From assembly GCA_038087875.1 (NCBI GenBank), contig CM075998.1, forward strand, positions 2,356,001-2,420,000: a DNA stretch of 64,000 nt, written 5' to 3'. The position numbers were made by a program, and so were the translations under genes. Source of the stretch: Malacoraja senta (taxonomy: Eukaryota). Numbering within the stretch: position 1 is the first letter of the stretch; every line of letters begins with the position of its first letter. The notes beneath the pieces were generated by a model, which made no database searches, was not told the origin of the DNA, and worked only from the letters and a program-made list of their open reading frames with translations. Positions 6,401-55,305 of the stretch are shown here, piece after piece.

Positions 6401-7444
6401 CCCCCCCCCCCCTCCAATGCTATCAGATCCCTTTCCAGTGGAATAGAGGCTCAGTATCAAATCCCACTGCTTAATACACTAGATCCCCATCCTATCGTGC
6501 TATTATACTGCAGAAACATACCACCGCAAAGCCCCTGGAAATATATTCCATCAGTTATACTAATCAAGATTGTTAGGTTCTTGATTAGTAAGGGTGTCAA
6601 AGGGAAGAAGGCAGGAGAATGGGGTTGAGAGCAAAAAATAGATCAGCCAAACCCAAACATGACCCAATTTAGAAACATTTAATACAAATGTAAATCAATA
6701 TACAATAATCAAGGCCACTCATATTTCTTACTTGGAAAAATGGACAGAATCTTGGAATTTGATCCTGAAATTCTAGAAAACCATGTGATTGATACACTTG
6801 GACTTATTCAGTAACAAGCCCTGATAACATATTGTGTATCGTGATGAGCTTTCTTTATACTCCCTTCAATTCACCAAAAGCAACAAAGAATGAGATTCCA
6901 TGAAGTAATATTTTGTAAATAGAAAATCTCATATACTGTTTCATAACAATTACCAAACCTTGCTTTTTTTTATTGCAGTTTATCGTGAAAGTTTAGACTG
7001 ATATGCAAATCAAATCTCGCTCAACAGAAATTAATTTCCACTGATTGGATAATATTGAAATAAATGGAATCAAATTTATGCCTCCTAATCCAAATTATGT
7101 AACAAAGAGAAGGTCAATCATTAAAGTCCGTTTTTTGAAAATTGTAAAAATGTTAATGAAAACGTGTACATTTCAGAAAGTTTAAAAAAAAACCATACAG
7201 CTTCTGTTTAGTTAGATCTCTTTGGTACAGTTTGCAAGAAAAAAAAACTATCACTTTACCTACCTCGCTAATCATTACCTTGCTTAAAATAACTCGGCTC
7301 ATGCCAGCTGCTCATACTGCCTGCTATATACTGTTCTCTTAATGCCCATTCCTTCCAACTGCACATCTCCACTTTGTAATGCAAATCTCTCTAGTTGTTT
7401 GATTTAACTGTGCCACAACTTGTGGGGGATCTTCTAGAAACATA

Positions 7445-7832
7445 GGGGGATCTTATAGAAACATATAAAATTATAAAAGGACTGGACAAGCTAGATGCAG
7501 GAAAAATGTTCCCAAAGTTGGGTGAGTCCAGAACCAGGGACCACACAGTCTTAGAATTAAGGTGGAGGCCATTTAAGAGTGAGGTGAGAAAAAACGTTTT
7601 CATCCAGAGTTGTGAATTTGTGGAATTCCCTGCCACAGAGGGCAGTGGAGGCCAAATCACTGGATGGATTTAAGAGAGAGTTAGATAGAGCTCTAGGGGC
7701 TAGTGGAATCAAGGGATATGGGGAGAAGGCAGGCACGGGTTATTGATTGGGGACGATCAGCCATGATCACAATGAATGGCGGTGCTGGCTCAAAGGGCCG
7801 AATGGCCTCCTCCTGCACCTATTTTCTATGTA
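7445..7832 (+). mobile_element. CR1 (HER1-like) 3' fragment
   Basis: GDLIETYKIIKGLDKLDAG...GYGEKAGTGY plus 3'UTR; nearly identical to 40221-40501. Confidence 0.88.
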
Positions 7833-9136
7833 ACTTGAATTCTATCTGGCCCAAGGGGTCCTAATTATCAAAATATTCTCAGCCCCAAACTACACAGTGG
7901 TTTTCCCCAACCTTTTATTGATGAGTCCTCAACCTGCTCCTACATACAGGTGATCCCCATGTTATGAGGGGTTGCATTGCTAGGAAATGGTCTGCACCGT
8001 GCTTTTCTGTAATGTGAAGCCGCATCATCTGTCCACTGGTCAAAATACGCGAGTTGAAAAAAACTTGTGTTCATTTAATTTTTTTCACATGATTTCCATG
8101 TAAGCAAATTTTATTCCTTGTCTCAAATTTCGGGGTAGTGATTTGTGAATTCTGTCTGTGTGAACTAGGATGGCCATACTGGGGAGGTGGGTCACCTGTA
8201 TTTCTTTGCAACTATTTATTTGTATTCTTACCCCATTACAAACTCCTTGCACAAATTCACCATCCCTTTGAAAAGTTTTGCTCAGTTACCATGAACAGAT
8301 CAATGAATATTGACTTCTTCATAAAAAGCCTTGAAAATCTCCAGTAGATGTAGTTACTTTACAAGTTGCCAGTCCCATGGGAATTGACTTCAAGTTCAAC
8401 TTGTAGGAACCGTTGCTAAGTATTAAACCAGAGCAGAGCATCTTTTGTGGTGAAATAGTGTTGGTTATAGGATCATTGATTGTTGTTATTCTGAGCATCG
8501 TTGGGGAAAAAATATATAGGGAATGGCCAACCTGTTAGTTTGACATCACTAATTGGGGAAAATGCTGGAATCTGTAAAAGGATGCAATATCAGCCTGGTA
8601 AATTTATAAGACTTTTCCTTAGATTTAATAATGTTTTTGCTATCTCTTGTAATCCATGATTAATTCATTTTCCCATTGTGTCTTTATTGCCTTGAAAGAA
8701 TGTATTTTTGTTACAAATCACATATTATTTCTTTAACTGCTAATGATTGCTTTGTCCAACATTACTGAAGTCTGAAGAAAGGTCACGACTCGAAACGTCA
8801 CCCATTCCTTTTCTCCAGAGATGCTGCTTGTCCCGTTGAGTTACTCCAGCATTTGTGTCTACCTTGTTAATTAAACCTTTCTTTCTGTACTGTTAGGTCT
8901 AAAATTGTTTGTTCCTCAACAGACCAGTTCAGAAATTCACCTGAATTTATATTCCAGGAATTCATCCTCTAAATGTTTTCAGACTAGTAATGGATCAAAA
9001 ATGCCATGATACGTGTAGTTAAACACACATCTCTGATATGCTCATTTATAGTGCACCCTTCATCACGACTTTCATTCAGATGCCTATGAACAACTCCCAC
9101 CAATGTTTCCTGCCCCCTGCTGTTTTTTGGCAAAAC

Positions 9137-9370
9137 TTAAATTATTTCTAATTCTATGTCACCATCTGCCAAGCCAGCATAATTTCTGAGCATTTCTGAG
9201 TACGTACTGTACTGGTGCCATCTCATGCCTCCTTTTTCCTTATGCCTGTCCTTCTCAAATGTCATATACCATGAAATATTTAGTTTCCAAGTCTGGCCAT
9301 CTTGCAGCCATGTTTCCATGATGGTAATTAGATAATTTCTATTTAGGGCTATTTGTGTTGTTAATCCACT
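9137..9370 (-). mobile_element. degraded CR1 endonuclease-domain fragment
   Basis: ITIMETWL...LNISWY...DRHKEKGG resembles APE endonuclease motifs. Confidence 0.6.
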
Positions 9371-9380
9371 CACCTTGCAG

Positions 9381-9580
9381 NNNNNNNNNNNNNNNNNNNN
9401 NNNNNNNNNNNNNNNNNNNNNNNNNNNNNNNNNNNNNNNNNNNNNNNNNNNNNNNNNNNNNNNNNNNNNNNNNNNNNNNNNNNNNNNNNNNNNNNNNNNN
9501 NNNNNNNNNNNNNNNNNNNNNNNNNNNNNNNNNNNNNNNNNNNNNNNNNNNNNNNNNNNNNNNNNNNNNNNNNNNNNNNN
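9381..9580. other. assembly gap (200 N)
   Basis: N run. Confidence 1.
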
Positions 9581-9889
9581 CTTCGTGCTTCTAAGACAAA
9601 GACGCAGATAGGGGCAAATTCTTAAAAACGATGATTGAAGTAAATACTTCCACCCGAAATGTCGAGTGTATTGTCATATATGCACAAGTACGTGAGTTAC
9701 AGGTGCAATGACAAACTTGCTTGCAACAGCATCAAAGGCAAGTAGACTCGGACAACACACAGGACTTAAATTATACATAAATTAAACAATACAGTGAAAA
9801 GAAAAAGACAGCAAAGCAAGATGCAAACTTCCAAAAAACAAATATAAGTAAGTCCGTGGTGGTGTAGTGTTCTGTTGCTGAAGTTGGAT

Positions 9890-10060
9890 TAAGGCTGTGC
9901 AGGTCAGTTCAAGAACCTGATCTTTATAGAAAAATAGCTGTTCCTCAACCTGGTGGTGTGGGACTTCAGGCTTCTGTACCTCCTGCCCGATGTTGGTAGC
10001 GAGAAGGCAGCAATTGCCCGGATGATGGGGATCTTTGATGGGTGTCATCTTCTTGATGCT
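9890..10060 (-). mobile_element. Rex1/Babar-type LINE 3' remnant
   Basis: IKDPHHPG... and RYRSLKSHTTRLRNSYF-type C-terminal peptides. Confidence 0.6.
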
Positions 10061-13000
10061 TTTGATTGTGGGGTGGGCTATGCCCACTATCCACTACTTT
10101 CTGCAGCCTCTTTTCTATTTTCTTTGCTGCTGGATGCATTTGACTTCTTGTTGGGCCATAGCTTCACTTTTCCATGTGAGTCTTGATCAGGCGTGACCAT
10201 ATAGCTATCGTGTTTGCCTCCAATTAGTGTTGCCTCCAATTAGTGTTTGCCAATTGCTTGTTAGTAGCCTTACATCGTATGAGGCTAGGGCTAATTGAGA
10301 CCCTCTTATCACTGTGATCGTGAACTGCACAGGCGCCCAGTGAACCTTTTGTGGTAGAATAGTTTATTCTATGTTGAGGGAGGGGAAAGTGAATTTTTGT
10401 TATACCTCTTTTAATTATTCTATTTTAAAACAAAATGTTGATATACACTTGTGCGCTTTCATTGTGCTATGAAAAATTTATATTGGAAATATTGGCCCAA
10501 CTAATTTTAAATTACAAATAAAAGTGCAGATGTTGGAAATCTTAAATAAAACAGAGAATGGTGAAAACACTCAGCAGGTTAAAACGGTATCTTTGACCTG
10601 AGATGAAACCCCTTTTTCTCTTTCCACCGATGCTGCCTGACCTGCTCTGTGCTTTCTGTTTTCATTTTAGTTTTAAATTATGCAGTGTCCTGGAAGTTTA
10701 GTGATGGAACGTGTGCAGAACCCTGGGAATCATGACCGTAGTCAGAGGTTTTGACGAGGTTCCCTACTTAGTTGAAGTTGAACGTGGAAGGACAGACGTT
10801 TGCTGCATAAAAATCATAAAATTGTTAACTTGCCATATTGCCCACTATCAATTATTGCAAAATTCACTTATCAGAATTCATTGTTTAATTATTAACTTTA
10901 TTACCTGCTGCCAATAAATACCTTTCATGCAAAAGTAACGCTTTCTGTATAAAACTGAACAAAGAGACCAATTGCACTCAAGTCGTGTCTCATGTTGTCA
11001 GACGGGCTTTTTATATATGTTTGTTTCTCGGCTCGGTTTCAAGTTTGAGGTTTGCTGCAAATCTGTAACAGTTCAGTAGGTCTAATAACTTAACTAGACA
11101 GGATGGCGGGACCATATAAAACTATTGGAGCCTCTAGGTTAGTGATTTTAGTGTCATGTGATTTTTGCATTTTATTCGTTAGGGGTCGTGATTTATCCTT
11201 GTTTTTAAAGCATTTGTCTTTGGGTGCAAATTGTTGAAGTTATTGCAATCCGTACATTCTGACAGCCTGATTTCCTTGAATTCCGTTAGTGTGTTCATAA
11301 TTAATTTGACAACATAATCACAATGGTGATCTGGGATAAGTGAAGCAAATTTAGCCATAAGCAGTAAGTTGGTTTATGGTCATGGTTTGAACTGAATTAA
11401 GGAGTGCCCTTGTAAGAGTTTCTTCATAGGCAATGTTTGTTTGGGTTTTGTACCCAGTTTTCGTATAATAGCCTTGCTAGAAAAATTGACACGTCTGCAG
11501 TTCTCAGTATGAATTAGAAGAAAACTGTTCAGGGGTCTTCTGATTGCAATCCCTTAATGAATGCAGGAAGCACCTATGCATGGTTATTAAGGAGTGGATT
11601 GGCTTCAGTTGTAAATGGCTGTCCTTTCCTCCCTTTATTCACCATCTCAGCTTTCAGGTTGGAGGGAGGGGTGCTGATTGACAAGTTGGCTGTTATCAGA
11701 GGTTGTATCTGCATCTGGCTACTAAATTAGCCTCCCTGAGGACGTGTAGAGAAAACGGACTTTCTGGTTAAAAGCTACTGTAGACAGCCCCATGATAGCT
11801 AAGATGGTACGAGGTGTAATATTAGATTGAGTGCAAGCTGCAATTTTGGACATATGGATTTTGTTTTAAATGTCCCATAGGCCTATTCTGAAGAAGAGCT
11901 AGGAGTTAGACACAAATGCTGCGATAAATCAGCGGGACAGGCAGCATCTCTGGAGAGAAGGAATGGGTGACATTTCGGGATGAGACCCTTCTTCAGACTG
12001 AATAACTCCAACATTTTGTGTCTATCTTCGATTTAAACCAGCATCTGCAGTTCTTGCCTATACAAGAGCTAGGAGTGGTTCTTGGTGTCCTATCTTGCAA
12101 AAAAAGATTGTTTGGTCATTTCTCGCTGTGCCCAAGATTTTGACTGTTTTCTAATTACAACAGCAACAGTACTTCATTGGCTGTAAAGTGACTCAGGATG
12201 TCCTGGTGTTGTGAAAGATACCATATAAACTGAAGTCTTTGTTCCTTTTGAAAACAATCTGTAATTGAAGCATACAGATCAAGGCTCCAGCCGGCAGTTA
12301 AGTGATCTTTGCTATGTCAATAGAAGAAAGCAGCAAACTTCCTTTTTGTCACATTTATTTCCTGCATGAAATCTTCATAATCAAATGACAGTTAAGGACA
12401 AGTTTGACCTTGCATATGTATACCCTTTTCCTGGAACCTCTCCAGCGCCCTAACCACTCTTCCCCCCCCCCCCCCCCCCCCCCCCCCAGTCTCATTATTG
12501 TATGAAGAGTTATCACTTGGACAAAGTATTCGAGGGCTGCCAAAATTTGGAATCCACGCCGTATATCAGGAAGAGAGACACAGGGAAATCGGCAAAATAT
12601 GGCTACCGTATTCAGTAATAGAGCAGTTGTTCAGTGGTAACTAATCATTACTTTCTGCAGATTTATACGTGTGTTCTGGTTAATACATCATTTAATAAAA
12701 ATCTTTAAACTAAAATTGCTCAACATCCTCCCTCTTGCGTAACAATAATGCCCCCATCTCATCTATCTTGCATAGCTGACTACAAATAATTAAGTTGGAA
12801 TTGTTTCAAGGTGCTATGGAGTTTAATCACAATACAAGTGTAACAAATCAATGGTAAATGCTGGTGTTCAGGTGATCTTATGCTATTTTTAAGTATAGTT
12901 ATTTAGGTACAAGCAAAGATTAGAATGGAAGCTTTGAATGGGAAGGTTGTGGATTTCCTACTCCATTGACTTCACGCAAATCTACTTCTGCCTTCAACAG

Positions 13001-22433: not shown

Positions 22434-22478
22434 GTAAGTTTTGAAAGTTTGGCTTTTCATTTCAAATGAACTGATGTA

Positions 22479-23159
22479 TCTATTATACTAAAAGTCTTGT
22501 CTTGTTTGTCTGTCTGTCTGTGAGATCAAGGAACGACGCCAAAATGGTACACAATAGCGCAATTTTTTTTTGCCGAATCTTACTCGACTTTTTCCTGTGG
22601 TCGTTAGTATCAAGTTTTTCACATTTGATGTTATATTTCACGTTATTGATATTTAACGTTTTTAAAAAGCCAACTTTGAAAATAATAACTGCCTTGGAGA
22701 GTGAGACTTTTCTAGCAGCCTCCAGTGATGATGTCACAATGGCATCTCACGGTCGTCCAATCGCAATGGGATCTCATTTACACAAGCTGCCATGAAGATT
22801 CCGAAAACCGAAAATGACATCACTGCACGGTGATCTCTGCTGCCAATACAGAAGCTCTGAGAGTTGACGGAGTGGGTGATGGGAGGAGATGAAATGTTAT
22901 TTAAACATTGTCTTTAATGAGGGGGGAGTGCGAAAGGGGAGAGGTGAGGGAGGGAGTGACTGAGGGTAGAGAAAAGGAGAGGGAGGTAGAGGTGACAGAG
23001 AGACAATGGGATCAGCAGCTTCAAGGGGAGTAAGGAGAGAGTGAGATTTTTGACCCCCCACCCCCCACGTGGGAAGGATTATCCTCCCGTATGACGTCGT
23101 GACCCGACCACCCCCCCCTGCGTTGGGGGGGCGGGGCCCAGCGGGTCCCACTTTGTCTA
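22479..23159 (+). mobile_element. non-autonomous Helitron-like element H1 (pa2g4 intron 7)
   Basis: A^TCTATTATACTAAAA 5' end followed by (GTCT)n; 3' hairpin GGGGCCC-agc-GGGTCCC (23133-23149), then actttgtCTA; no TSD. Confidence 0.75.
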
Positions 23160-24887
23160 TATATATATATATATAACTAAAATTCTCATCTTGTTATCTG
23201 CAGGTTTGCATTGTACCTCTATTTGCGCAAAAACGGTACACGATAGCGCTATAATTTTTGCCCCACCTTACCATTGTCCTGTGGTGCAAATGAAACAAGT
23301 TTTGTGCAGATTGATGGTATATTTTAAAAGTCATTAACGTTTAAAGGTTTGTGTTGTACCTCCATTTGCGCAAAAACGGTACACGATAGCGCTACCATTT
23401 TTGCCCCACCTTACTCATTGTCCTGTGATGTACATGAAACAAGTTTTGTGCAGATTGATTTTAAAAGTTATTAACATTTAAAGGTTTGTGTTGTGCCTCT
23501 ATTTGCGCAAAAACGGCACACAATAGCGCTACAATCCCCCCCCCCCCCAGCCTTATTCTCCATTGTCCTGTGGTGTAAATGAAACAAGTTTTATGCAGAT
23601 TGATAGTATATTTTTAAAGTTATTAACGTTTAACGGTTTGTGTTGTACCTCTATTTGCGCAAAAACGGTACACGATAGCGCTACAATTTCCTCCCCGCCT
23701 TATTCACCATTGTCCTGTGGTGCAAATGAAACAAGTTGTGTGCAGATTGATGGTATATTTTAAAAGTTATTCACGTTTATAGGTTTGTGTTGTACCTCTA
23801 TTTGCGCAGAAACAGTACACTATAGCGCTACTATATTTGGCCCACCTTATGCACCATTGTCCTGTGTTGTAAATGAAACCAGTTTTGTTCAGATTGATGG
23901 TATATTTTTTAAGTTATTGACGTTTTAAAAAAAAACTTAAAACAGCGCCCCCACCCGCGCATGCACAGTTGGGGTGAGTTTCTGTGCTCGTCATTATTAC
24001 CGTCACAAAGGGCACCCAACGGGTCCTCAGCAGCGTCTGTGCAGTTGGGGCCGTGCCAGAATTCAGATCGTCATCTTTTTTTCACAACGGCGACACGGGT
24101 AAGATTTTAAAAACAGCATTTTACTGCTGCTCCGGGCCCGCGGGGATCCGCCACCTTGGCGCTGAGGCTAGGGCTGTAGCCGGCTCCGGGGACGGGGAGA
24201 GGCCAGGCTGATGATCTGAGGCTTGGGCGCTGAGGCTGGCTCTCCAGGCCCGCGGGGATCCGCCGCCTTGGCGCTGGGTCTGGGTCTACGGGCGGCAGCG
24301 GCCAGGGGCGGGGAGAGGCCGCGCCGAGGATCCGGGGCGCTGAGTCTGGCTCTGAGGCCGACGGCTGCTGCTGCTGCTGCTCCGGGCTCGTGCGGCGGGC
24401 TGAGGCAACTCCGAGGCCTGGGCGCTGAGCCTGGCTCTGAGGCAGACGGCTGCTGCTGCTGCTGCTCCGGGCACGCAAGGAGAGGAGCGGCAACCTCGAG
24501 ATCCTGGGGAGGTGAGGAGGGAGAGTGGGGGGATTGAAGAAGGGGGGGAAAGTGGGGGAGGGGAGGAGGGGCAATAGAGGGAGACGAGGGTGGGGGAGGT
24601 AGGGAGTGGGAAATGGGAGAGGAGGGCAGTAGGGATAGTGGGGGGGGGATAGGGAAAGGTGAGGAGTAGTGGATAGAGGGGGTAGGGAGGAGAGATTATG
24701 GAAGGAGGGATTGGGGGAGGAGATGATAAAGAAGAGGGAGTGCTGGGGGCTGAGGAAATGAACCGCGCCTGCGCAGTTGGGGTCCATGGGTGAGTGGTGG
24801 AATATTGTGTTGGGGGAATGGGTGAGTGGTGGAATATTGCGTTGGGGGAACGGGTTGCGTTGAGGGAACCGGACCCACTTAGTCTAG
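23156..24887 (+). mobile_element. non-autonomous Helitron-like element H2, head-to-tail with H1
   Basis: TCTA(TA)nACTAAAA 5' end, internal ~145-bp tandem array, GC-rich cargo, GA-rich tract, ends ggacccacttagtCTAG^T. Confidence 0.75.
23203..23925 (+). repeat. minisatellite, 5 units of ~137-152 bp, inside H2
   Basis: Units start ggtttg at 23203, 23346, 23483, 23635, 23782 (core tgtacctctatttgcgcaaaaacggtacacgatagcgct). Confidence 0.92.
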
Positions 24888-30260: not shown

Positions 30261-30398
30261 TTGGTGAGTAAAAGCTCTTAAATACAATATGATGGGCTCC
30301 TCCTCCCCCACCCCACCGCCCTCACAAAAGCTGTGGTGGTAAATGGCATGCGTTTGTCCCGCAGTAATTTAATCCACTTGTATATCTTTCATCTCCAG

Positions 30399-30464
30399 GC
30401 TTCCCAGTGTGGACTCCCTGCCACCACTGGCAGCACCAATGAGGAGAACGAGACTGGAGACTGA
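30399..30464 (+). CDS. pa2g4: pa2g4 exon 13 coding part (ASQCGLPATTGSTNEENETGD*)
   Basis: atctccag acceptor, TGA at 30462-30464; resembles the recalled human C-terminus ASK...TLEENEAGD. Confidence 0.92.
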   Translation, partial: ASQCGLPATTGSTNEENETGD

Positions 30465-31004
30465 CATCTCGTAACCATAGCCCCAGAACTAACCTGACCT
30501 TTGACATACTGTCTGTACCTGATGACGAGCTGTTTAGTGTACAGCTTGTGGGCCCCTATATTCTTACACTGAGGGAGGATTCTTCCACAAGACTCGCATT
30601 TATGACTGCAGACTACTTCAAAAAAATAAAAAAACAAAAAAAATCTTTGTGCTATTTGTATGGTTTTATATTTTTTATCCAAGCAAGAACATATGGCAAT
30701 GAGAGTAATTGGTATAGAAGATTTAAAGGTAGCTGTTTAACTCTAACCCCAGGCCCTTTTTTTTGCTATGCAGTAGTTTCCCTCGGGTGTTTGTGTAGTC
30801 ATCCAACTTGTTGGCTATTACTGCGTACTGAGACGGTGTTATAGTCATCTAATGCTCTTTGCTCAGATCTTGGGGTGGGTGGAATAGGGCAGAGTTTCCA
30901 AAACATTTTTAAACTGTATAGATTATTAGACAACATTTTCCACCACCTTTTGTATCCAGTTTTATGAAATATTGCCATTCTCCCCGTTACCTATTGTGGT
31001 TATA

Positions 31005-31010
31005 AATAAA
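31005..31010 (+). terminator. candidate proximal poly(A) signal of pa2g4
   Basis: AATAAA about 540 nt after the stop codon in TE-free U-rich sequence. Confidence 0.4.
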
Positions 31011-32017
31011 AATGCTGCAATTGCTGGTAATCTTTCCTCCAGTAGAGTTTTCTGTAGACTCGAAACAGCTCAGGATAAATTGAAAAAGTACATGCAAAGC
31101 TATTATTACCTATACCAAGTAATTCAGAAGTTTTTCCGCAATCTCCAGGAGGCTGGGAATATTTTGTTTTCAAATTAATACCAAGATTAATTCTGAACCT
31201 CTGTGCATAATGGGCCAAATAACAATTGACAATAGACCAGTTCGGAGTCCATGTACATTGTTTCTGTACTGTGAAATGTTTTATTTTTTTCTCTCTCATA
31301 TTTTTGGGGAAGAGGGAATTTCCATTTTACAGGCCTGAATTGCAGGATTGGAAGTGTACTTGTGAGCAAACGCTGAATTGATGCAGATTTATATAATATA
31401 ATGAATTGTGTGGTTCTGTCTGATTTCTGTCTCTTTTGAAGATTGGCCAGTATTCTGTTGATATTTGAAAATGCTGTCCCTACCTTTTTTATTTAAAAAA
31501 AAACTAAAAAAGAATAGCATACCAAACTAGAATAAGGACTCTTGTTTTGCCAGCCCTTACTTACCGTCAATGACTTCTGTGTGTTTGTGTGAGATAGGAG
31601 CTCAGTGTAATACCATGATTTGTTTTGGGTCACTGTGGGGATTAAATAAATAAGTGAATATTAATCCTGCATTTGGTTTGTCTTGCTTCATGTCCCCTGC
31701 CATTGACTGCAATACCTTCCAGTCATTAAAGGACCCTTGGTGTAATGTGATTCTGGTCATAATGGATGATTCCCAGTCTTTATGGATGTTGTTCATTGCT
31801 GTTGATTATAATGGTTCCTTTGTGATTGCACCACACTGCTACCACTTGGTGCGCACGACCTTTGCAGGCAGCAATGCCTCCTTGTTCATCTGTTGTTGCC
31901 CTGGCACTGACCCTGGAGCAGCTGCTGGGAGTGATCTTGCATTGTTAGTGCAACATGGCTGCCTACCATCTGCTTTTGATACTCAAAATATGCACTCCGT
32001 GCGTTTTTAAGTCGTCG

Positions 32018-32023
32018 AATAAA
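32018..32023 (+). terminator. candidate distal poly(A) signal of pa2g4
   Basis: AATAAA followed by a U/GU-rich tract (gtttgtcttttttctgtg); repeats resume about 400 nt later. Confidence 0.5.
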
Positions 32024-32744
32024 AAACTCAATTCAAGATATTTTTTAATAAGTTTGTCTTTTTTCTGTGCTGAATCCAAAGGGATTTTGGAGGTGCTTTA
32101 ATACGGATTTGAAGCTGGACATTGATTGATATTGCAGCTGGACATAATTATCTGTCGCAATTTTTTTTGTAGGAATTTCTCTTAACCTTGTCTCTAGGTA
32201 GTGATTTGAAAATTTGGGACCTCTTTCATTACAATCTCTTCACTCAGTGGAACAACTTTCTCTTCATGCTGCTGAATTTTAAACTTGTATGTGTAAAAGC
32301 TCCCATACTGTGTAGTGAAAATAGGTTAGTATCAAAATCTCATGAGCACGTTCGAGTTGACCCAGCGTGTCCTTCATTGCTACGTTTGGGATTATTGCAC
32401 AGCACCAATGGCATTTTGGAACAGCACAGGAACAGGCCCTTCAGCCCACGTCTGTACCGAACATGATGGCAAGTTAAGCTAATCTCCCCTGCCTGCACCA
32501 TATCCCTCCATTTCCTGCATGTACAATGCAATATCTAAAAATCTCTTGAATACTACTATCGTATCTGCCTATTGCCACCACCCCTGGGAGTATGTTCCAG
32601 GCACCCAAAGCACTGCACATCACTTTCAAAATTTGCTCCTCTCACCTTAAAACTATGCCCTCTAAGATTTGACATTTGTACCCTGGGGTAAAAGGTTCGG
32701 AATGTCTTCTGCATCCTCTCCAAAGCCTTCGCTTCCCTCCTGTA

Positions 32745-33024
32745 GGCGCGACAGATAGAGCTTCTGCATCACAACGCCAGAGACCCAGGTTCGATCCTGA
32801 CCTCGGGTGATGTCCGTGTGGAGTTTGCACGTTCTCCCTGTGACCACGTGGGTTTCCTCCTACATCAAATAGACATGCGAGTTTGAAGGTTAATTGGCCT
32901 CTGTAAATTGCCTCTAGTGGGTGAGAAAGTGGAATAACATGAAACTAGTGTGAACGGGTGATCAATGGTCGGTGTGGACTCGATGGGTTGAAGAGCATTT
33001 CCATGCTCTTATCTCTCAACTAAA
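32745..33024 (+). mobile_element. tRNA-derived V-SINE (HE1-like)
   Basis: B box ggttcgatcc; V domain gtgtggagtttgcacgttctccctgtgacc. Confidence 0.8.
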
Positions 33025-33098
33025 CTGCACACCAAATACGGCCTAACGAAAGTCCCTATAACGTTGGAAAATGATTTCTTGACTTATGTTCAATCATA

Positions 33099-34655
33099 TC
33101 TAACTTTATATTTTTAAAACTTTCGTGTTGGTTTGCCCGGGTTCTATTTCGCGAATATTCGTTTAAGGCGCTTGTGGATCTCCTCCGAAATTTGCAAAAA
33201 ACTGAACAATTTTTACATATTCCCGGAGGGTTTTTCCTCCTCCACTTAATGTTTGGAAAATTAGAAAATTTGGTTCATCCTTTCCCTGCTTTTTCGGTAA
33301 AAAACATATTAAAAAAATGCAAAATGTTTTTAAAAATCCAACTGCTTCTCACCCATAGAACGTTGAAGCACGTTCCATCGTGTGATGTCACAATGCCCAA
33401 TGCTCAGGACAGAATAATATCGACAGAAAACAATATTTCCTCACCTTTGTTATTGGGGAACCTGAAGAAAGACAGATAGGGTCGTCTACATTGTCGATTA
33501 CAGCAATTTATAGCAGAACAGTGAGCTGTAGATGTAGTGGACGCCATGACGGTATCGAGGCAGTCCTTCAAAATGGCGCGAACAATCGACCCTCGCGTTC
33601 TCAACGGCCGCAACTGTCCAGCGCCAACTGTCGACGACCCCCCCCACAACTGTTGCGTTAAACCCCCCACCACCTGTTAACCTCCCGCCTGTCCGCGCCA
33701 GCTGTCGTCTCTCCCCCGCACGGCTCCAGCTTTCGACGCCCGTTAACCTCCCGCCAACCCAACTCTCCAGCCCGGTAACATCCCGCCTCCCCCGCCGTCG
33801 ATGTCCGTTAACCTCCCGCCGACCCAACTATCGACGCTCGTTTGCTCACGGCCTCCAGCTGTTGACACTCCCGCCCGCCTTCACCCTCTCAATTGTCGAC
33901 GGCCATCAACTGCCCACCCCCCCCAGCTGTGTCCGCACGGTTGAACTGTTGCCGACCCTTCTCGCCCGTACACTCAAACAATTGTTCAATGCCCGTTAAC
34001 CGCCCCCCCCCCCCCTCCCAAATGGCGACGCTCGGCCATCCAGCTGTTGACCTTCGCTCATTCACGTAGCACAACAGTCGACCATCGCTCCTGGGCTGCT
34101 GGACCAACTGTCAATGCTCTCTCCTGGCCGACCAGACCAACTGTCGACGCGCGCTCCCGGCCCGACCAACAGTCAACGCTCGCTCCCGCGCAATGGCGGC
34201 CGTTGCTTCCCACCCTGCCCGCACTGATAGCGGCAGCTTCTTTTCAAATCCTAAATGCCAAGTCATTATGCCCGGCTTGGCACTGCAGATACTGGTTTAT
34301 ACTGAAGATTGATACAAAAAATGGAGTAACTCAGCGGGTCAGGCAGCATCTCTGGAGAAAGGAAGGGGAGGTTTTGTGTCCCTCTACTCATCTCTCTCTT
34401 CCCCCCCCCCCACTCTCCCCCCTTTCCCCTGTCCCCCTCCCTCTCCCCCTCTCTCTCTCCCCCTCTCTCTCCCCCTCTCCTCTTTCTCTCCCTCTCACCC
34501 TCCCTCCTCTCTCCCCACTCCGTCTCCCCCTACCCCCCTCTCACCCTCCCCCCCCAGTGTGTGTGTGGGGTGGTTAGTGTGCGTGTGAATCCGCAGCACC
34601 CCCCACCCAACCACGTGTTGGGGGAACAGACCCAGCGGGTGTGCACTTGGTCTAG
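33099..34655 (+). mobile_element. non-autonomous Helitron-like element H3 with captured cargo
   Basis: A^TCTAACTTTATATTTTTAAAAC 5' end; shares gatgtcacaatg with H1; ends gttgggggaacagacccagcgggtgtgcacttggtCTAG^T like H1/H2/H4. Confidence 0.72.
33445..33547 (-). pseudogene. orphan THAP-domain first exon (MASTTSTAHCSAINCCNRQCRRPYLSFFRFPNNK) inside H3
   Basis: C-x4-C-x-N...LSFFRFP is the N-terminal THAP signature; strong Kozak gtcATGG; donor AAG|GTGAGG; no second exon visible. Confidence 0.75.
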
Positions 34656-36205
34656 TAGATTTTATTTATCTAGTTAGTTGCTTCAAAAGAAAATCATTAA
34701 ACTTGTAAAACATACATTTTTTTAACAGATCTATGCAAGATGTCTTTAAAACACTCCTCTAAACATTGAGTAATTGGATTTTGTTGAAATTGACCCACAA
34801 CTTCTGTTGAACTTGCTGGATTCTGGATTATCCTTTTTCTTCAGCATTGACGTTGCTACCTTGTGAAGTTAACATTCATTTTTTCCCACTGATGTTTACA
34901 GTATTTCGACACTTGTGTACCATTCACGTTGTTGGGCAAATGCAGTTTTGCTATTGTTTGCAAATACCCCGTTTCAGAAAGGATCCCAACAACTTTGTCT
35001 GTCAATCCCAGTCTGAATAAGGGTTTCGGCCCGAAACGTTGCCTATTTCCTTCGCTCCATAGATGCTGCTGCACCCGCTGAGTTTCTCCAGCATTTTTGT
35101 GAACCATCCCAACAACTTGTTGTTTTAAAGCAGCCAGGCCAAACAAACTGCTGATTAACACAATCTTTGAATTTGAAGTTGGAGATTTGCACTTAAACAG
35201 TGTCTATTATTCAACACTATTTACTGTAGTCTCTAGACATGTGAAAAGCAACAGTTTTGACCCAGTTTCCTTTGCATGCCATTGCATCTCCACCACTAGA
35301 TTCTGCTAACAGTGAGGGAAGAAGCTATTCCTGTCTTATGAATGGACCTCTTAAAAGCTAAGGATGTCGTCCTGATCTCCCAATCTACCTCACTGCAGCC
35401 CTTAATTTTTGTTTGTAAATCTGTACTTTCTCTGTAGCTGTAACACTATATTCTGCACTCTGCTTAATTTTCTTTGCACTACCTGTTGTACTTGTGTGTG
35501 GTTTGATTGTACTCGTTCGTGGTATAATTTGCCCGGATAGCATGCAAAACAAAGTTTATTACTGTATCTCAGTACATGTGGCAATAAACCAATTACCAAT
35601 TCATGCAGAATTGCTGCTCCTTTTGCAGGTGAACAGTGCAGCCTGTTTCATGCACTATTTTGATTGCAACAGTGATTGATGCGATAATTAAACATCTTAT
35701 AAAGGTGAGAAACAAATGACTCTACTGAGGTTAACAGAAAACTGTTGCTGTTATTGAAGTAATGTGGTTTTCAGGGCTCCTCCCTACATCACCATTGTAT
35801 GTTGACTGAACATTTTCTTCTGCATCCGGTACTGCATCTCTCTCCCAACAATGTTTAAAAGATCACAATGACCAAATTGAATGAAATATAAACTTTGATC
35901 ATACTTCTTTCTACTTAAGCTGTTGTTTGCCAGTTGCTTGTGCTTCTATATGCGATTATTTGAAAGCCTGACCTTACTCCAGTACTTCCCATCCACCTAA
36001 AGAAGATAAAGGCTTCATTCGCAAATTTCCCAAAGTTCAAGGGGGTTTGCTTGACAGAAAAGCACAAAAGCAAACTTTATCAAGAGAGAGCTATGAAGGT
36101 GATGTCAGTGATTCAAATATTCCTGTGTATTCACTCCACTTTATCCTTAATTGAGCTCCATTTGGCGTGATACATTGGCCATTTTAGGCAGACAATGTAT
36201 ATGTA

Positions 36206-37614: not shown

Positions 37615-37877
37615 TGAAACGTCACCTATCCATGTTCTCCACAGATGCTGCCTGACCCGCTGAGTTACTCCAGCACTCTGTGAAACGTCACCTATCCATG
37701 TTCTCCACAGATGCTGCCTGACCCGCTGAGTTACTCCAGCACTCTGTGAAACGTCACCTATCCATGTTCTCCACAGATGCTGCCTGACCCACTGAGTTAC
37801 TCCAGCACTCTGTGAAACGTCACCTATCCACATTCTCCCCAGATGCTGCTTGACCCGCTGAGTTACTCCAGCACTTT
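37615..37877 (+). repeat. 4 x 66-bp tandem array of the Penelope-derived unit
   Basis: tgaaacgtcacctatcc... recurs at 37615, 37681, 37747, 37813. Confidence 0.93.
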
Positions 37878-52938: not shown

Positions 52939-55000
52939 TTATGTGGCTTCTGTCCAACCTCATCCGGACATGGGTATACGGACACAGCTCAGCGAGGGTG
53001 CTGCCTGCATCGTACAGGGGATGGTAATGACCAGCGTTGGCGTGTCCCTGTGTTACAATCCAGATTTTTTTTTATGGTCAAGTGGAACTTGGTGATAAAA
53101 CATCAGGCAGAAATGCGTGCAAATTTCTAACCTGTACATTGCGATAAAGTACTTTGTGCACTCAGCAAACATACCAAGTTATCCAGCACCGCAAACAGCA
53201 AATCTACCAGGACTCGCAAGAATTTACACCTACATCAGCCACTTACATGTATTACTGATATTGGAGACAGTCTCGGGTGTGTCACCTGCAAGACTGCACT
53301 CACAGTCCCTCCCAAATCTGTGACTACCATCGATAAGGGGAGCTTCAGGTGCATGGGAATACCACCCCTGAAATGTTTCCCTCAGTCACGCACTGGAGTT
53401 CTAACACTCCTCTCCATTGAAACTGCTCTCAATAAAAATAATGGCGAGCAAATCATTAAAATAAGTTTACAGCATTGTAGAATGAGATACACTTAGAAGG
53501 AGGTCCTAAAAGGATCGATTGTCAGAGCTTGTTTCCCCACCAGGGCAAGGGGTTCTAAAACTACAGGGCACAGGATTAAGGTGAGAGGGGTGAAACTTAA
53601 AGGAGATCTGTGGGCCAGGTTTTTCACAGGGGATGGTGGTTAGATGGAACAAGGTGGTAGAACCGGGTACAATTAACTCTTTTAAAGGCATATGGATAAA
53701 TACCTGGATAGGAAAGGTGCAGAAGAATGTGGGCAAATGGAATTAGCATAGGTGGGTCTCTATTTCTATTCTGTTGCTGTATAACTGACTTTATTTGGTC
53801 GAGTTGGCCCCACTTTCTCTTTCTCCTTGCTCTGCAAAACGATTGAGGTTTGATCCAATTCCCCTTTCAGAAGTTCACATTGAAGCTATTCAAATACCCT
53901 TTTAGGCAGTGCAATGTAGATCTTTGCTGCTCACCTGCCTACCAACGTGTCCCTGATCAAAGTGCTGCTTGCATTCTGTTCTTGGATACTGTGGTTTGGT
54001 CTGCACCTTTTTTTTTTCAAGAATTGTAGTGCCTCTTTAAATTGCTCTGTTGTAAAATCAGACTTTTTTTCCAAATAAATCTTGATTTAATTCCCTTCAT
54101 CGCAGTGTGCTGTCCAGGTCTTCTGTGTAGGAGCCAGGACAGTTTATTTCTCCAGAAAATCTGCTCCACACTCAAGGAGAGAAGAGTTCATGCTAATAGA
54201 GACCCAAACATGTGTGACCTAATGTCCTGTCAAAAGGCCGACACTCTCCTTTCTAATGAGTCACATATGGACCACACGTGTTCAATAAAATCAATATTTA
54301 ACAGAGCTCTTGAGCTTTCGTAAAAGTGTATCTGTAAAGTTATGCCTCCTGGGCAACAGCCTGATGGTTTCAATTGTCAGAAGAATTACTGTATGCTCCT
54401 CTGCCAAGGTGAAAGCCGAGCTAAGATTTCTAATGGAAATTTGAAGGAAAAAAAAGTAAATCTGAAAGGATTAAAATGAAGATGTTCAAGAACTTAAACT
54501 GGGCATGCCTGGTGACTGGAAATCCTCTAGCTTCCAGTTGCAGTCGCAAAGCAACAGGCAGAATAGAAGTTGCCCCTGACAGTTTCCATCTTATTTCATG
54601 GGGCTAGGACACGGATTATTTTGAAACATTGAATGCAGAGCTGCCTCTCTGAGGGAGGGGTCGGCCTTCATGTGCCAAGTTATCTGTTTCCCAGTGTACT
54701 GTCGGCCGGATGTGGTGCTGCAGAGGTCAGCTGAGACGGTGGCTATCTGGTGACCCAGCCAACTGCAACAATTAACTCTGCATGGTCATTTAAGTGGTGT
54801 TTCCAGAATGGCCGATGTACCTGAACCAAGCTCGACTTGAGAACTACTTGAAGTATGAAGATTTTGCTAATGGCATGCTGGTCACCAGAATGAGGCCAAA
54901 TCATTTTTTAAACATATGAAGTATTCTACTAAAATATCCAAGGATTAAGGTGTACAGAGAGTGCTGTATTACCATTGGTGTTTCAGAACAAGTGGAGTTA

Positions 55001-55305
55001 TCTTAGAGAGGGGTTATGGAGGGAGTGACTGAGGGTACGGGAAAGGAGAGGGAGGGAGAGGTGGGGGAGGGGAGGAGGAGAGGGGAAAGAAGAGGTGAAG
55101 AGGAGTGGGAGGGTGTGCTGGGGATGAGGAGGATAGGGGTAGGAAGAGGGATGGCGAGGATCAGTTGGGGAGGGTTGCCGTGACTCGCGTCACAACGGGG
55201 ATCTCTGGCGTCACAACGGTAACCGGTCAGCCGCGTCTGCACAGTTGGGGGCTATGGGTGAGTGGTGGAATATTGTGTTGGGGGAACGGGGCCCACTTGG
55301 TCTAG
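55001..55305 (+). mobile_element. short Helitron-like element H4 (3' portion of the family)
   Basis: Shares ggagggagtgactgagggta with H1 and gggtgagtggtggaatattg with H2; ends cccacttggtCTAG^T; starts A^TC. Confidence 0.7.

What the first reader, a model, noticed from the sequence alone, without database searches (positions are those of the whole stretch)
33099..34655. Helitron-like element carrying an antisense promoter-like region and a THAP-domain first exon with an intact donor
Seen: the element has A^TC...CTAG^T termini shared with three other copies in the window. On its minus strand a CpG-rich stretch with a YY1-type motif (CAAAATGGCG, 33569-33578) leads into gtcATGG, then 34 stop-free codons (MASTTSTAHCSAINCCNRQCRRPYLSFFRFPNNK), then AAG|GTGAGG. 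About 40 nt further on the sequence returns to Helitron-family DNA (gatgtcacaatg, also in H1). Established: C-x4-C...SFFRFP is the N-terminal half of a THAP zinc finger, and Helitrons capture promoters and 5' exons in maize and bats. Inference: this is a mobile promoter + THAP-start + splice-donor cassette in an elasmobranch, able to start chimeric or antisense transcripts wherever it lands. Here it points back at the pa2g4 3' end, about 1.4 kb from the distal poly(A) signal. The source could be a host THAP gene or a THAP-bearing DNA transposon (P, Kolobok, Harbinger/ISL2EU).
Basis: partly seen in the sequence, partly recalled or inferred. Interest (0 to 1): 0.8.

Follow-up and report, generated by a model that had tools for sequence, protein, structure and literature searches.

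The report
Helitron carrying a stolen transposase exon
A 1.56-kb rolling-circle (Helitron-like) transposon that landed just downstream of the skate pa2g4 gene carries, backwards, a roughly 195-base piece of a P-element-like transposase gene (its THAP first exon and splice donor). It looks like a decaying passenger fragment, not a working promoter-and-exon cassette.

Summary
The sequence features are real. On the minus strand, an ATG at 33547 is followed by 34 open codons and AAG|GTGAGG.

An empty site in Rhinoraja longicauda (TTCAA|TAGATT) shows that window 33094/33099-34655 is one insertion between A and T, with no target duplication. It starts with TC and ends with CTAG. Its 3' end is shared with at least eleven other copies in the window and in skate loci, so "Helitron-like" holds.

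The THAP piece is not from a host gene. It is a fragment of about 195 bp (-48 to intron +43) of a P-element/THAP9-like transposase gene that is abundant in skates.

The functional reading is not supported:
- P homology stops 48 nt upstream of the ATG.
- The CpG-rich stretch is a repeated, minisatellite-like sequence. Its CpGs differ between species at least as often as flank CpGs do.
- This copy has lost 4 nt at the exon end, which shifts the phase.
- The Amblyraja radiata ortholog is split by another Helitron.
- The only RNA reads over the exon carry letters of other copies, and they come from another species.

The scan has already noted this exon-capturing Helitron family many times in this genome. 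This is a new member of a known kind, of low to moderate interest.

The parts
33094..34655 (+). Whole Helitron-like non-autonomous insertion. It starts TCATATCTAAC... and ends ...GGTCTAG. The left edge is 33094 by the empty site, or 33099 if Rhinoraja lost 5 nt.
   Evidence: Rhinoraja longicauda (L005) reads ...TTCAA|TAGATTTTATTTATC, with nothing in between. The A. radiata alignment of the left flank ends exactly at 33098.
33094..33401 (+). 5' part of the element. It is AT-rich and itself a multi-copy repeat. It resembles other family 5' parts only weakly.
   Evidence: Contigs of a relative match 33107-33380 and 33250-33397, and the summed depth is far above single copy. The match AATGTTTTTAAAAATCCAACT with H1 is reached by 1 of 300 shuffles. 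This part is absent from the A. radiata ortholog, where 4.46 kb of tandem Helitron units stand in its place.
33402..33444 (-). Start of intron 1 of the P-like transposase gene (about 43 nt), part of the captured fragment.
   Evidence: DNA homology to P-like loci L001 (Priapulus), L003 and L006 (A. radiata) runs through the donor into the intron and stops here.
33445..33547 (-). Exon 1 of a P-element/THAP9-like transposase. It has the ATG, 34 codons holding the first C-x4-C and the SFFRFP of a THAP finger, and the donor AAG|GTGAGG. A 4-nt loss (AAAG) at its end shifts the phase from 2 to 1.
   Evidence: The canonical end AAAGAAAG|GTGAG is seen in L003, L006 and the A. radiata ortholog. About a third of the paralogous depth inserts CTTT behind 33444 (table 4).
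33548..33595 (-). The last 48 nt or so of the P-like 5' leader, including the GCCATTTT (YY1-like) motif at 33569-33578.
   Evidence: Alignment by eye with L006 and L003. BLAST homology to L006 reaches 33592.
33596..34250 (.). CpG-rich, degenerate minisatellite-like stretch with repeated CAACTGTCGAC-type motifs and periods of 29-32 nt. Its origin is unknown, it is not P-like, and it has no coding signal.
   Evidence: It is multi-copy, but the paralogous contigs share only blocks of 150-230 nt. It is conserved in the A. radiata ortholog at 83-89%. CpG sites differ at 19%.
34298..34380 (+). Fragment of a very abundant SINE-like repeat, part of the cargo.
   Evidence: In one search the depth is in the millions, and loose ends show that other copies continue on both sides.
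34381..34560 (+). CT-rich low-complexity tract, part of this Helitron subfamily's own 3' backbone.
   Evidence: The same tract precedes the 3' end in the L. erinacea copy in L007.
34561..34655 (+). Conserved Helitron-family 3' end. It has GTTGGGGGAAC, a remnant of the hairpin (ACCC AGC GGGT), about 11 nt of spacer and the terminal CTAG.
   Evidence: (80% over 60 nt with L007-L009). The hairpin is clear in sister copies (GGGGCCC/GGGTCCC and GGGACCC/GGGTCCC).

Best explanation
Window 33094/33099-34655 is one copy of a non-autonomous Helitron-like (rolling-circle) transposon family of skates.

It inserted between an A and a T, about 1.4 kb beyond the pa2g4 poly(A) site. This happened after the lineage of the window species plus Amblyraja radiata split from Rhinoraja.

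Between the family's own 5' part and its CT-rich tract plus 3' end, it carries a patchwork of foreign DNA:
- a fragment of about 195 bp, in antisense orientation, of a P-element/THAP9-like transposase gene (-48 to the ATG, exon 1, the donor, and 43-55 nt of intron 1);
- a CpG-rich minisatellite-like stretch;
- a piece of a SINE.

The fragment includes intron sequence and both of its breakpoints lie inside P-like sequence. It was therefore taken from genomic DNA as a fragment (inferred: Helitron-type capture or filler DNA), not by insertion of a complete P element.

The copy is inert as far as can be seen, and it is drifting differently in the two species that have it. Shown: the insertion, its ends, its family, the origin of the exon, and its decay. 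Inferred: the capture mechanism and the lack of function.
For: Empty site:
- L005 (Rhinoraja) joins window 33093 to 34656 as TTCAA|TAGATT, with no duplication.
- Two more filled/empty pairs of the same family show A|TC...CTAG|T. The window is empty where A. radiata has L004 37079-38503. Rhinoraja is empty where the window has 22467-24887.

Family:
- The 3' ends match C(A/C)CTT(G/A/T)GTCTA(G/T), preceded by GTTGGGGG and a hairpin.
- They lie at window 23160, 24887, 34655 and 55305; at L004 24463, 32900, 36321 and 37079(-); at L003 287(-); and in L007-L009. None occurs in 40 kb of Rhinoraja.
- No terminal inverted repeats were found.

Origin of the exon:
- phmmer hits are N-termini of THAP + Tnp_P_element proteins. 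These include skate proteins such as P0016, which reads NRQCRRPDLSFFRFPNNKER.
- DNA identity of 79-81% to L001, L003 and L006 is confined to about 33402-33595.
- No second half of a THAP domain lies on the minus strand anywhere in the window.

Age and decay:
- The A. radiata ortholog has the same left junction and shares 33404-33508 (94%) and 33510-34385 (83-89%).
- In A. radiata the exon is split by another Helitron, and the 3' end is deleted together with 128 nt of flank.
- Codon 16 is Cys in the window, Tyr in A. radiata and Ser in the family.
- The 4-nt loss is specific to the window lineage.
- CpG decay is not reduced.

Published properties match. Helitrons have 5'-TC and 3'-CTRR ends, a 3' hairpin that acts as a terminator, an AT target, and they capture promoters and 5' exons (PMC4778049, PMC4224331).
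Against: - The 5' end of this copy resembles the family only weakly, and its exact start is ambiguous by 5 nt.
- Its own 3' hairpin is reduced to 4 bp, and the folding energies are no better than shuffles.
- No autonomous Rep/helicase partner was looked for, so 'Helitron' rests on ends, target site and behaviour.
- The left 305 nt of the window copy and the 4.46 kb at the same place in A. radiata are unrelated. The history therefore includes a replacement that I cannot reconstruct.
- The copy number of the composite was not measured genome-wide.
- The RNA data come from other species, so 'inert' is an inference, not a measurement.
Confidence: 0.8

Rival explanations
1. The element is a working, mobile promoter + THAP start + splice-donor cassette. 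It fires minus-strand transcripts towards the pa2g4 3' end, or makes chimeric transcripts wherever copies land.
For: - The ATG, open exon and consensus donor are intact.
- A GCCAT(T/C)TT motif sits about 25-35 nt upstream of the ATG, as in genuine skate P-like copies.
- CpG o/e is 1.14-1.18 in both species.
- Bat and maize Helitrons do create such transcripts (PMC4224331, PMC4528327).
- RNA reads of a related species cover the exon family at a depth of about 8 per mate orientation.
Against: - Those RNA reads all carry G at 33476 and at 33501. Both orthologous copies have A at 33476, and C or T at 33501. The reads therefore come from other P-like copies, and from another species.
- RNA depth is essentially zero over 33649-34239 and over the unique bins 31679-32269.
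- P homology ends at -48, so the P promoter region is not shown to be on board.
- CpGs in the stretch differ between species at 19%, against 14% in the flank, and non-CpG sites at 4.8% against 2.0%. There is no constraint and no protection.
- The 4-nt loss shifts the exon phase. In A. radiata the exon is interrupted by a 1.4-kb Helitron.
- The inspected paralogous contigs do not bridge the junction between exon and CpG stretch (table 8).
Confidence: 0.06
2. Nested insertion instead of capture. A P-like transposon inserted into a Helitron that was already sitting there (or into the donor copy), and was later whittled down by deletions to the 195-bp remnant.
For: - P-like elements are abundant in skates. 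The exon region has a summed contig depth hundreds of times the single-copy depth, and many skate proteins belong to the family.
- The two families are found nested in the other direction. Helitron copies lie inside P-like genes in three L. erinacea loci, and a Helitron splits the P fragment in A. radiata.
Against: - No inverted repeats or 8-bp duplication flank the fragment.
- Both breakpoints lie inside P-like sequence. Genuine copies L003 and L006 share a further block near -100 that is missing here, and the intron homology continues in them. Two independent deletions would therefore be needed.
- The neighbouring cargo is also made of fragments, such as the truncated SINE. That is the usual look of Helitron cargo.
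Confidence: 0.12
3. It is the promoter and first exon of an ordinary single-copy host THAP gene next to pa2g4, and the Helitron-like ends are coincidence.
For: There is a CpG-rich stretch upstream of an ATG exon with a good donor.
Against: - The whole 1.56 kb is absent from the orthologous Rhinoraja site.
- No further THAP exon lies in the 33 kb downstream on that strand.
- The exon is 79-81% identical at DNA level, intron start included, to P-like transposase loci in skates and even in Priapulus.
- The exon region is highly multi-copy.
Confidence: 0.02

Closest known systems
Helibat / HelibatN elements of vespertilionid bats with captured promoters, 5' UTRs and first exons (PMC4224331), and the Helraiser mechanism (PMC4778049)
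   Same: 5'-TC and 3'-CTAG ends, a subterminal 3' hairpin in family members, insertion at A|T without duplication, non-autonomous copies with conserved ends and variable cargo, and cargo made of a first exon with its donor and the start of intron 1.
   Different: - The cargo here comes from another transposon's transposase gene, not a host gene.
- This copy's hairpin is degenerate.
- No Rep/helicase partner was identified.
- No chimeric transcript is shown.
- The lineage is a skate, for which my paper searches found no description.
Maize Helitrons that give chimeric transcripts from captured exons (PMC4528327)
   Same: A patchwork of captured fragments that keeps splice sites, giving the potential to contribute exons.
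   Different: In maize, transcription and splicing are documented. Here there is none for this copy, and the exon phase is broken.
P element / THAP9 transposases (PMC7776569, PMC8230255)
   Same: The exon encodes the start of the N-terminal THAP DNA-binding domain. The nearest relatives carry THAP plus the Tnp_P_element HTH domain, and some also the RNase H-like N-terminal domain.
   Different: Only 34 codons are present. The C-x2-H half of the zinc finger, the HTH domain and the catalytic domain are all missing, and no TIRs or 8-bp TSD are found. It cannot encode a DNA-binding or catalytic protein.
Other cargo-carrying copies of the same Helitron family noted by this scan in the same genome (ALG13, HTRA2 and SAC3D1 first exons)
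   Same: The same kind of element, and the same kind of cargo (exon 1 + donor + start of intron 1).
   Different: Those cargoes are host genes and are reported as spread to hundreds of copies. I did not check those notes. For the present cargo, amplification as a unit is not shown.

Membership tests
Helitron (canonical, Helitron1-type) | 5' terminus TC | tested here: met
   The insertion begins TCATATC (33094) or, five bases on, TCTAAC (33099). Sister copies begin TCTATT, TCTACT, TCTGCA and TCTATC.
Helitron (canonical, Helitron1-type) | 3' terminus CTRR | tested here: met
   It ends GGTCTAG at 34655. Ten of the 12 other family ends listed are CTAG and two are CTAT.
Helitron (canonical, Helitron1-type) | Insertion between A and T without target-site duplication | tested here: met
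   The Rhinoraja empty site reads TTCAA|TAGATT. Two further empty/filled pairs of the same family agree.
Helitron (canonical, Helitron1-type) | GC-rich hairpin about 10-12 nt before the 3' end | tested here: inconclusive
   This copy keeps only ACCC-AGC-GGGT. Sister copies have 7-bp stems 10-11 nt from the end (window 23133-23149, L004 36293-36311). Folding energies are not better than shuffles for such short GC-rich DNA.
Helitron (canonical, Helitron1-type) | No terminal inverted repeats | tested here: met
   The inverted-repeat scan of 32900-34800 gives only short chance-level pairs, none of them terminal.
Helitron (canonical, Helitron1-type) | Autonomous partner encoding a Rep/helicase protein in the same genome | not tested
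   No tool here searches this genome as a whole. No long ORF lies in the element or in the A. radiata array.
THAP domain (PF05485) | Complete C2CH zinc finger (C-x2-4-C-x35-53-C-x2-H) passing the Pfam threshold | tested here: not met
   Only C-x4-C and SFFRFP are present. The score is 13.6 bits against a cut-off of 23.9, covering profile positions 1-27 of 87. No C-x2-H or AVPT half lies downstream. It is a fragment of a THAP domain, homologous to the N-termini of full domains.
P-element / THAP9-like transposon | Transposase with THAP + Tnp_P_element HTH + RNase H-like domains | tested here: not met
   The relatives have these domains (P0002, P0005, P0011). Here only exon 1 and its immediate surroundings are present.
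P-element / THAP9-like transposon | Terminal inverted repeats and an 8-bp target duplication | tested here: not met
   None lies around 33402-33595. The search for inverted copies of the leader in L003 and L006 was also uninformative.

The most novel reading that the evidence does not exclude
Skate Helitrons may pick up 'first exon + donor + start of intron 1' modules preferentially. The examples are the host ALG13, HTRA2 and SAC3D1 first exons in this scan's earlier notes, and now the first exon of a P-like transposase. That would point to a capture step tied to the 5' ends of transcription units. The antisense P fragment, if transcribed from the Helitron or from pa2g4 read-through, could then feed small-RNA silencing of the P-like family, making one transposon an accidental trap for another.
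Probability: 0.08. Interest if true: 0.55.

Novelty: new member of a known kind. Interest (0 to 1): 0.25.

Why it matters
The finding documents, with an orthologous empty site, that a Helitron-like family was active in skates (Rajidae) after they split from Rhinoraja. It also shows that the family shuffles pieces of other mobile elements as well as host genes. That helps repeat annotation of cartilaginous-fish genomes. It also warns against reading the many 'THAP first exons' there as genes or promoters.

By itself this copy changes nothing about pa2g4 and opens no long-standing question. Helitron exon capture is textbook in maize and bats, and this scan has already met the family repeatedly in this genome.

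Tried and rejected
1. A run search with the element itself found only small shares (0.18 or less) in many organisms, probably low-complexity or SINE words. It was useless for copy number.
2. A protein search with the 89-aa read-through ORF found no candidate.
3. The look-up by sequence in earlier findings was blank.
4. A regex and tblastn search for the second half of a THAP domain on both strands of the window found none.
5. The search for P-type inverted repeats around the fragment and in P-like loci gave nothing convincing.
6. Pfam scans of seven ORFs in the 5' part, the CpG-rich stretch and the CT-rich tract gave no coding signal.
7. Folding of the 3' ends gave energies not distinguishable from shuffles. 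The hairpin argument rests on conserved position only.
8. I considered whether the CpG island is protected from methylation. The comparison with A. radiata shows CpG sites changing at 19% (flank 14%), so this was rejected.
9. I considered that the RNA reads on the exon show expression of this copy. This was rejected because all of them carry the paralogue letters and come from another species.
10. A simple 3'-end-bypass transduction model does not fit. In the A. radiata ortholog the Helitron/P junction lies inside a Helitron unit, not at a CTAG end.
11. One look-up (P0018) failed for lack of a free slot and was not repeated.
12. To reach PA2G4 orthologues I used an artificial two-row alignment, because the length filter excludes single exons. 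It only served to obtain protein ids, and the loci were then checked by DNA alignment.

Full report
**What is in the sequence**

On the minus strand the window reads gtcATGG, with the ATG at 33547. Then come 34 open codons (MASTTSTAHCSAINCCNRQCRRPYLSFFRFPNNK) and G|GTGAGG, so a consensus donor AAG|GT sits at 33445/33444. CAAAATGGCG lies at 33569-33578.

Upstream on that strand, 33548-34250 has GC 0.63 and CpG o/e 1.14, against 0.40 for the whole window. It is built of degenerate repeats with periods of 29-32 nt and recurring CAACTGTCGAC-like motifs. Next come a fragment of an extremely abundant SINE-like repeat (34298-34380), a CT-rich low-complexity tract (34381-34560) and the end ...GTGCACTTGGTCTAG|T at 34655.

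**Is it an inserted element, and of what kind?**

I obtained the orthologous pa2g4 loci of two other skates. The window's PA2G4 exons match protein P0085 almost exactly. Its 90% cluster holds the proteins of Amblyraja radiata and Rhinoraja longicauda, whose loci are L004 and L005.

In Rhinoraja, the alignment of the left flank stops at window 33087 and the right flank resumes at 34656. The junction reads ...TTCAA|TAGATTTTATTTATC. The window has TTCAA, then TCATATCTAAC...GGTCTAG, then TAGATTTT. This is an empty site: one insertion of 1.56 kb between an A and a T, with no duplicated target, beginning TC and ending CTAG.

The same 3' end (GTTGGGGG, a short GC hairpin, about 11 nt, then CTT(G/A/T)GTCTAG) closes:
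- three other elements in the window (23160, 24887, 55305);
- four in the A. radiata locus (L004);
- one in locus L003;
- copies in three Leucoraja erinacea loci (L007-L009).

None occurs in 40 kb of Rhinoraja.

Two more filled/empty pairs behave the same way. The window is empty (GCTA|T) where A. radiata has a 1.4-kb copy. Rhinoraja is empty where the window and A. radiata have the tandem pair 22467-24887 in a pa2g4 intron.

There are no terminal inverted repeats. These are the defining features of Helitrons (PMC4778049, PMC4224331).

Weak points:
- This copy's own hairpin is reduced to 4 bp.
- Its 5' part resembles the family only faintly.
- No Rep/helicase partner was sought.

The CT-rich tract plus the last 110 nt or so recur in the L. 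erinacea copy. They are therefore backbone, not cargo.

**Where the THAP exon comes from**

Pfam gives THAP as the only hit, but a weak one (E 0.12, profile positions 1-27 of 87), as expected for a third of a domain.

A phmmer scan of 1.84 billion proteins returned 15 hits. Most of them match through an N-terminal THAP segment, and every one of the eight I scanned has a full THAP domain (E 1e-17 to 1e-19). Three of those also show the P-element transposase HTH domain, one only just below Pfam's cut-off. A profile search added many skate proteins. The closest is P0016 of A. radiata, which reads ...NRQCRRPDLSFFRFPNNKER.

At DNA level the window is 79-81% identical to P-like loci of A. radiata (L003, L006) and even of the priapulid Priapulus caudatus (L001). 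The identity holds only from about 33402 to 33595. That span is 48 nt of leader, the exon, the donor and about 43 nt of intron.

Genuine P-like copies share more sequence on both sides: a block near -100 and the continuing intron. The window therefore holds an internal fragment taken from genomic DNA. No second THAP half exists on that strand anywhere in the window. No P-type inverted repeats flank the fragment.

**Copy number and RNA**

I laid contigs of a run that matches the window without a single difference over 30300-32446, where single-copy depth is about 10-20. At 85% likeness this gives the following summed depths:

| Region | Summed depth |
|---|---|
| Exon bin (33452-33648) | about 6,500 |
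| 33255-33451 | about 88,000 |
| CpG-rich stretch | 900-2,000 |

So every part is repeated in the genome. The exon's abundance is what an abundant P-like family predicts. Nearly all paralogues have G at 33476 (a synonymous change in Tyr24). Most have G at 33501, which gives Ser16 and the canonical CSAINCSNR.

The few long paralogous contigs shown do not bridge the junctions. One exon copy diverges upstream of 33582. Copies of the CpG-rich stretch share only 150-230 nt, then diverge towards the exon (table 8). Amplification of the composite is therefore not shown, but this sample is small.

The oligo-dT RNA reads are from a related species; they differ from the window at fixed positions in the pa2g4 3' UTR. 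They cover pa2g4 up to about 31,700 at depth 50-60. They give zero depth over the unique bins 31679-32269 and essentially zero over 33649-34239. Over the exon bin they give about 8 per orientation, and every read there carries the paralogue letters. Both orthologous copies have A at 33476. There is thus no RNA evidence for this copy, and equally no real test of it.

**History and state of the copy**

A. radiata has the insertion at the same left junction (...TTCAATCATA|). It shares 33404-33508 at 94% and 33510-34385 at 83-89%. The insertion therefore predates the split of the two species (2% divergence at non-CpG flank sites) and postdates the split from Rhinoraja.

The two copies have since drifted apart:
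- In A. radiata another Helitron splits the exon at about 33509.
- In A. radiata a deletion removed the CT tail, the 3' end and 128 nt of flank.
- In A. radiata 4.46 kb of tandem Helitron units with 51-nt minisatellites stand where the window has 33099-33403.
- The A. radiata copy keeps a dozen more bases of P-like intron, so its left junction is probably the older one.
- The window copy alone lost AAAG at the exon end. The family and the A. radiata ortholog read AAAGAAAG|GTGAG, in phase 2. The donor is regenerated, but the phase is now 1.
- Codon 16 is Cys in the window, Tyr in A. radiata and Ser in the family.

Within the CpG-rich stretch, CpG sites differ between the species at 19% and other sites at 4.8%. 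In the flank the figures are 14% and 2.0%. Nothing suggests protection from methylation or selective constraint. The high CpG content is more simply explained by youth and by the GC-rich minisatellites typical of this family's interiors, such as window 24100-24500.

**Verdict**

The exon is a captured piece of a P-like transposase gene. The functional reading (a mobile promoter-exon-donor cassette aimed at pa2g4) has no support and several points against it.

Earlier notes of this scan describe the same family elsewhere in this genome with host first exons as cargo. They also describe P-like THAP transposons in the same genome. I did not check those notes; they agree with what I found independently. 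My paper searches found no description of Helitrons in skates, so the lineage is new but the phenomenon is not.

Noticed in passing
L001 (Priapulus caudatus, GCA_000485595.2) 6017-9798 against L003 (Amblyraja radiata) 8023-10255: The P-like THAP transposase gene of a priapulid worm and that of a skate are 82-86% identical at nucleotide level over 130-635-nt blocks, and alike even at the start of intron 1. Relatives turn up patchily in sea urchins, octopus, a moray eel, pipefishes and hagfish. This looks like horizontal transfer among marine animals.
   Followed up: partly
P0012 / P0017 (Leucoraja erinacea, annotated TRIM55-like): These predicted proteins join the THAP domain and N-terminal region of the P-like transposase to a B-box and a TRIM coiled coil. 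They are a candidate host-transposase fusion gene.
   Followed up: no
L004 32503-39320 (A. radiata, orthologous site): The site holds a tandem array of Helitron-like units joined CTAG|TATAAT and CTAG|TCTGCA, with 51-nt and 48-nt minisatellites inside. An inverted sister copy splits the THAP exon. The site seems to have attracted repeated Helitron insertions.
   Followed up: partly
window 22467-24887: Two Helitron-like elements lie in tandem in a pa2g4 intron; the first ends CTAT at 23160. They are shared with A. radiata and absent from Rhinoraja. The second carries 147-nt tandem repeats and a GC-rich repeat block (GC 0.70).
   Followed up: partly
L007, L008, L009 (L. erinacea), about 6680-7450 in each: Three separate loci encode the identical P-like protein P0024, and each holds the same Helitron copy in antisense orientation downstream of exon 1. 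A P-like element that already contained a Helitron was therefore itself multiplied.
   Followed up: no
window 33569-33578; L003 about 7965; L006 about 4965: A GCCAT(T/C)TT motif (YY1-like) sits 25-35 nt upstream of the ATG in the skate P-like copies, and GCGCCATTT lies about 100 nt upstream in Priapulus. It may be a conserved promoter or leader element of this transposon family.
   Followed up: no
window 54929-55305: A short (about 375 bp) member of the same Helitron-like family begins TCTACTAAAAT and ends GGTCTAG|T. It has a GA-rich interior related to that of the 22467-23160 copy.
   Followed up: no
window 37615-37875 against L005 38968-39472: A 66-nt tandem repeat derived from the abundant SINE-like element has three to four units in the window and more in Rhinoraja.
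   Followed up: no
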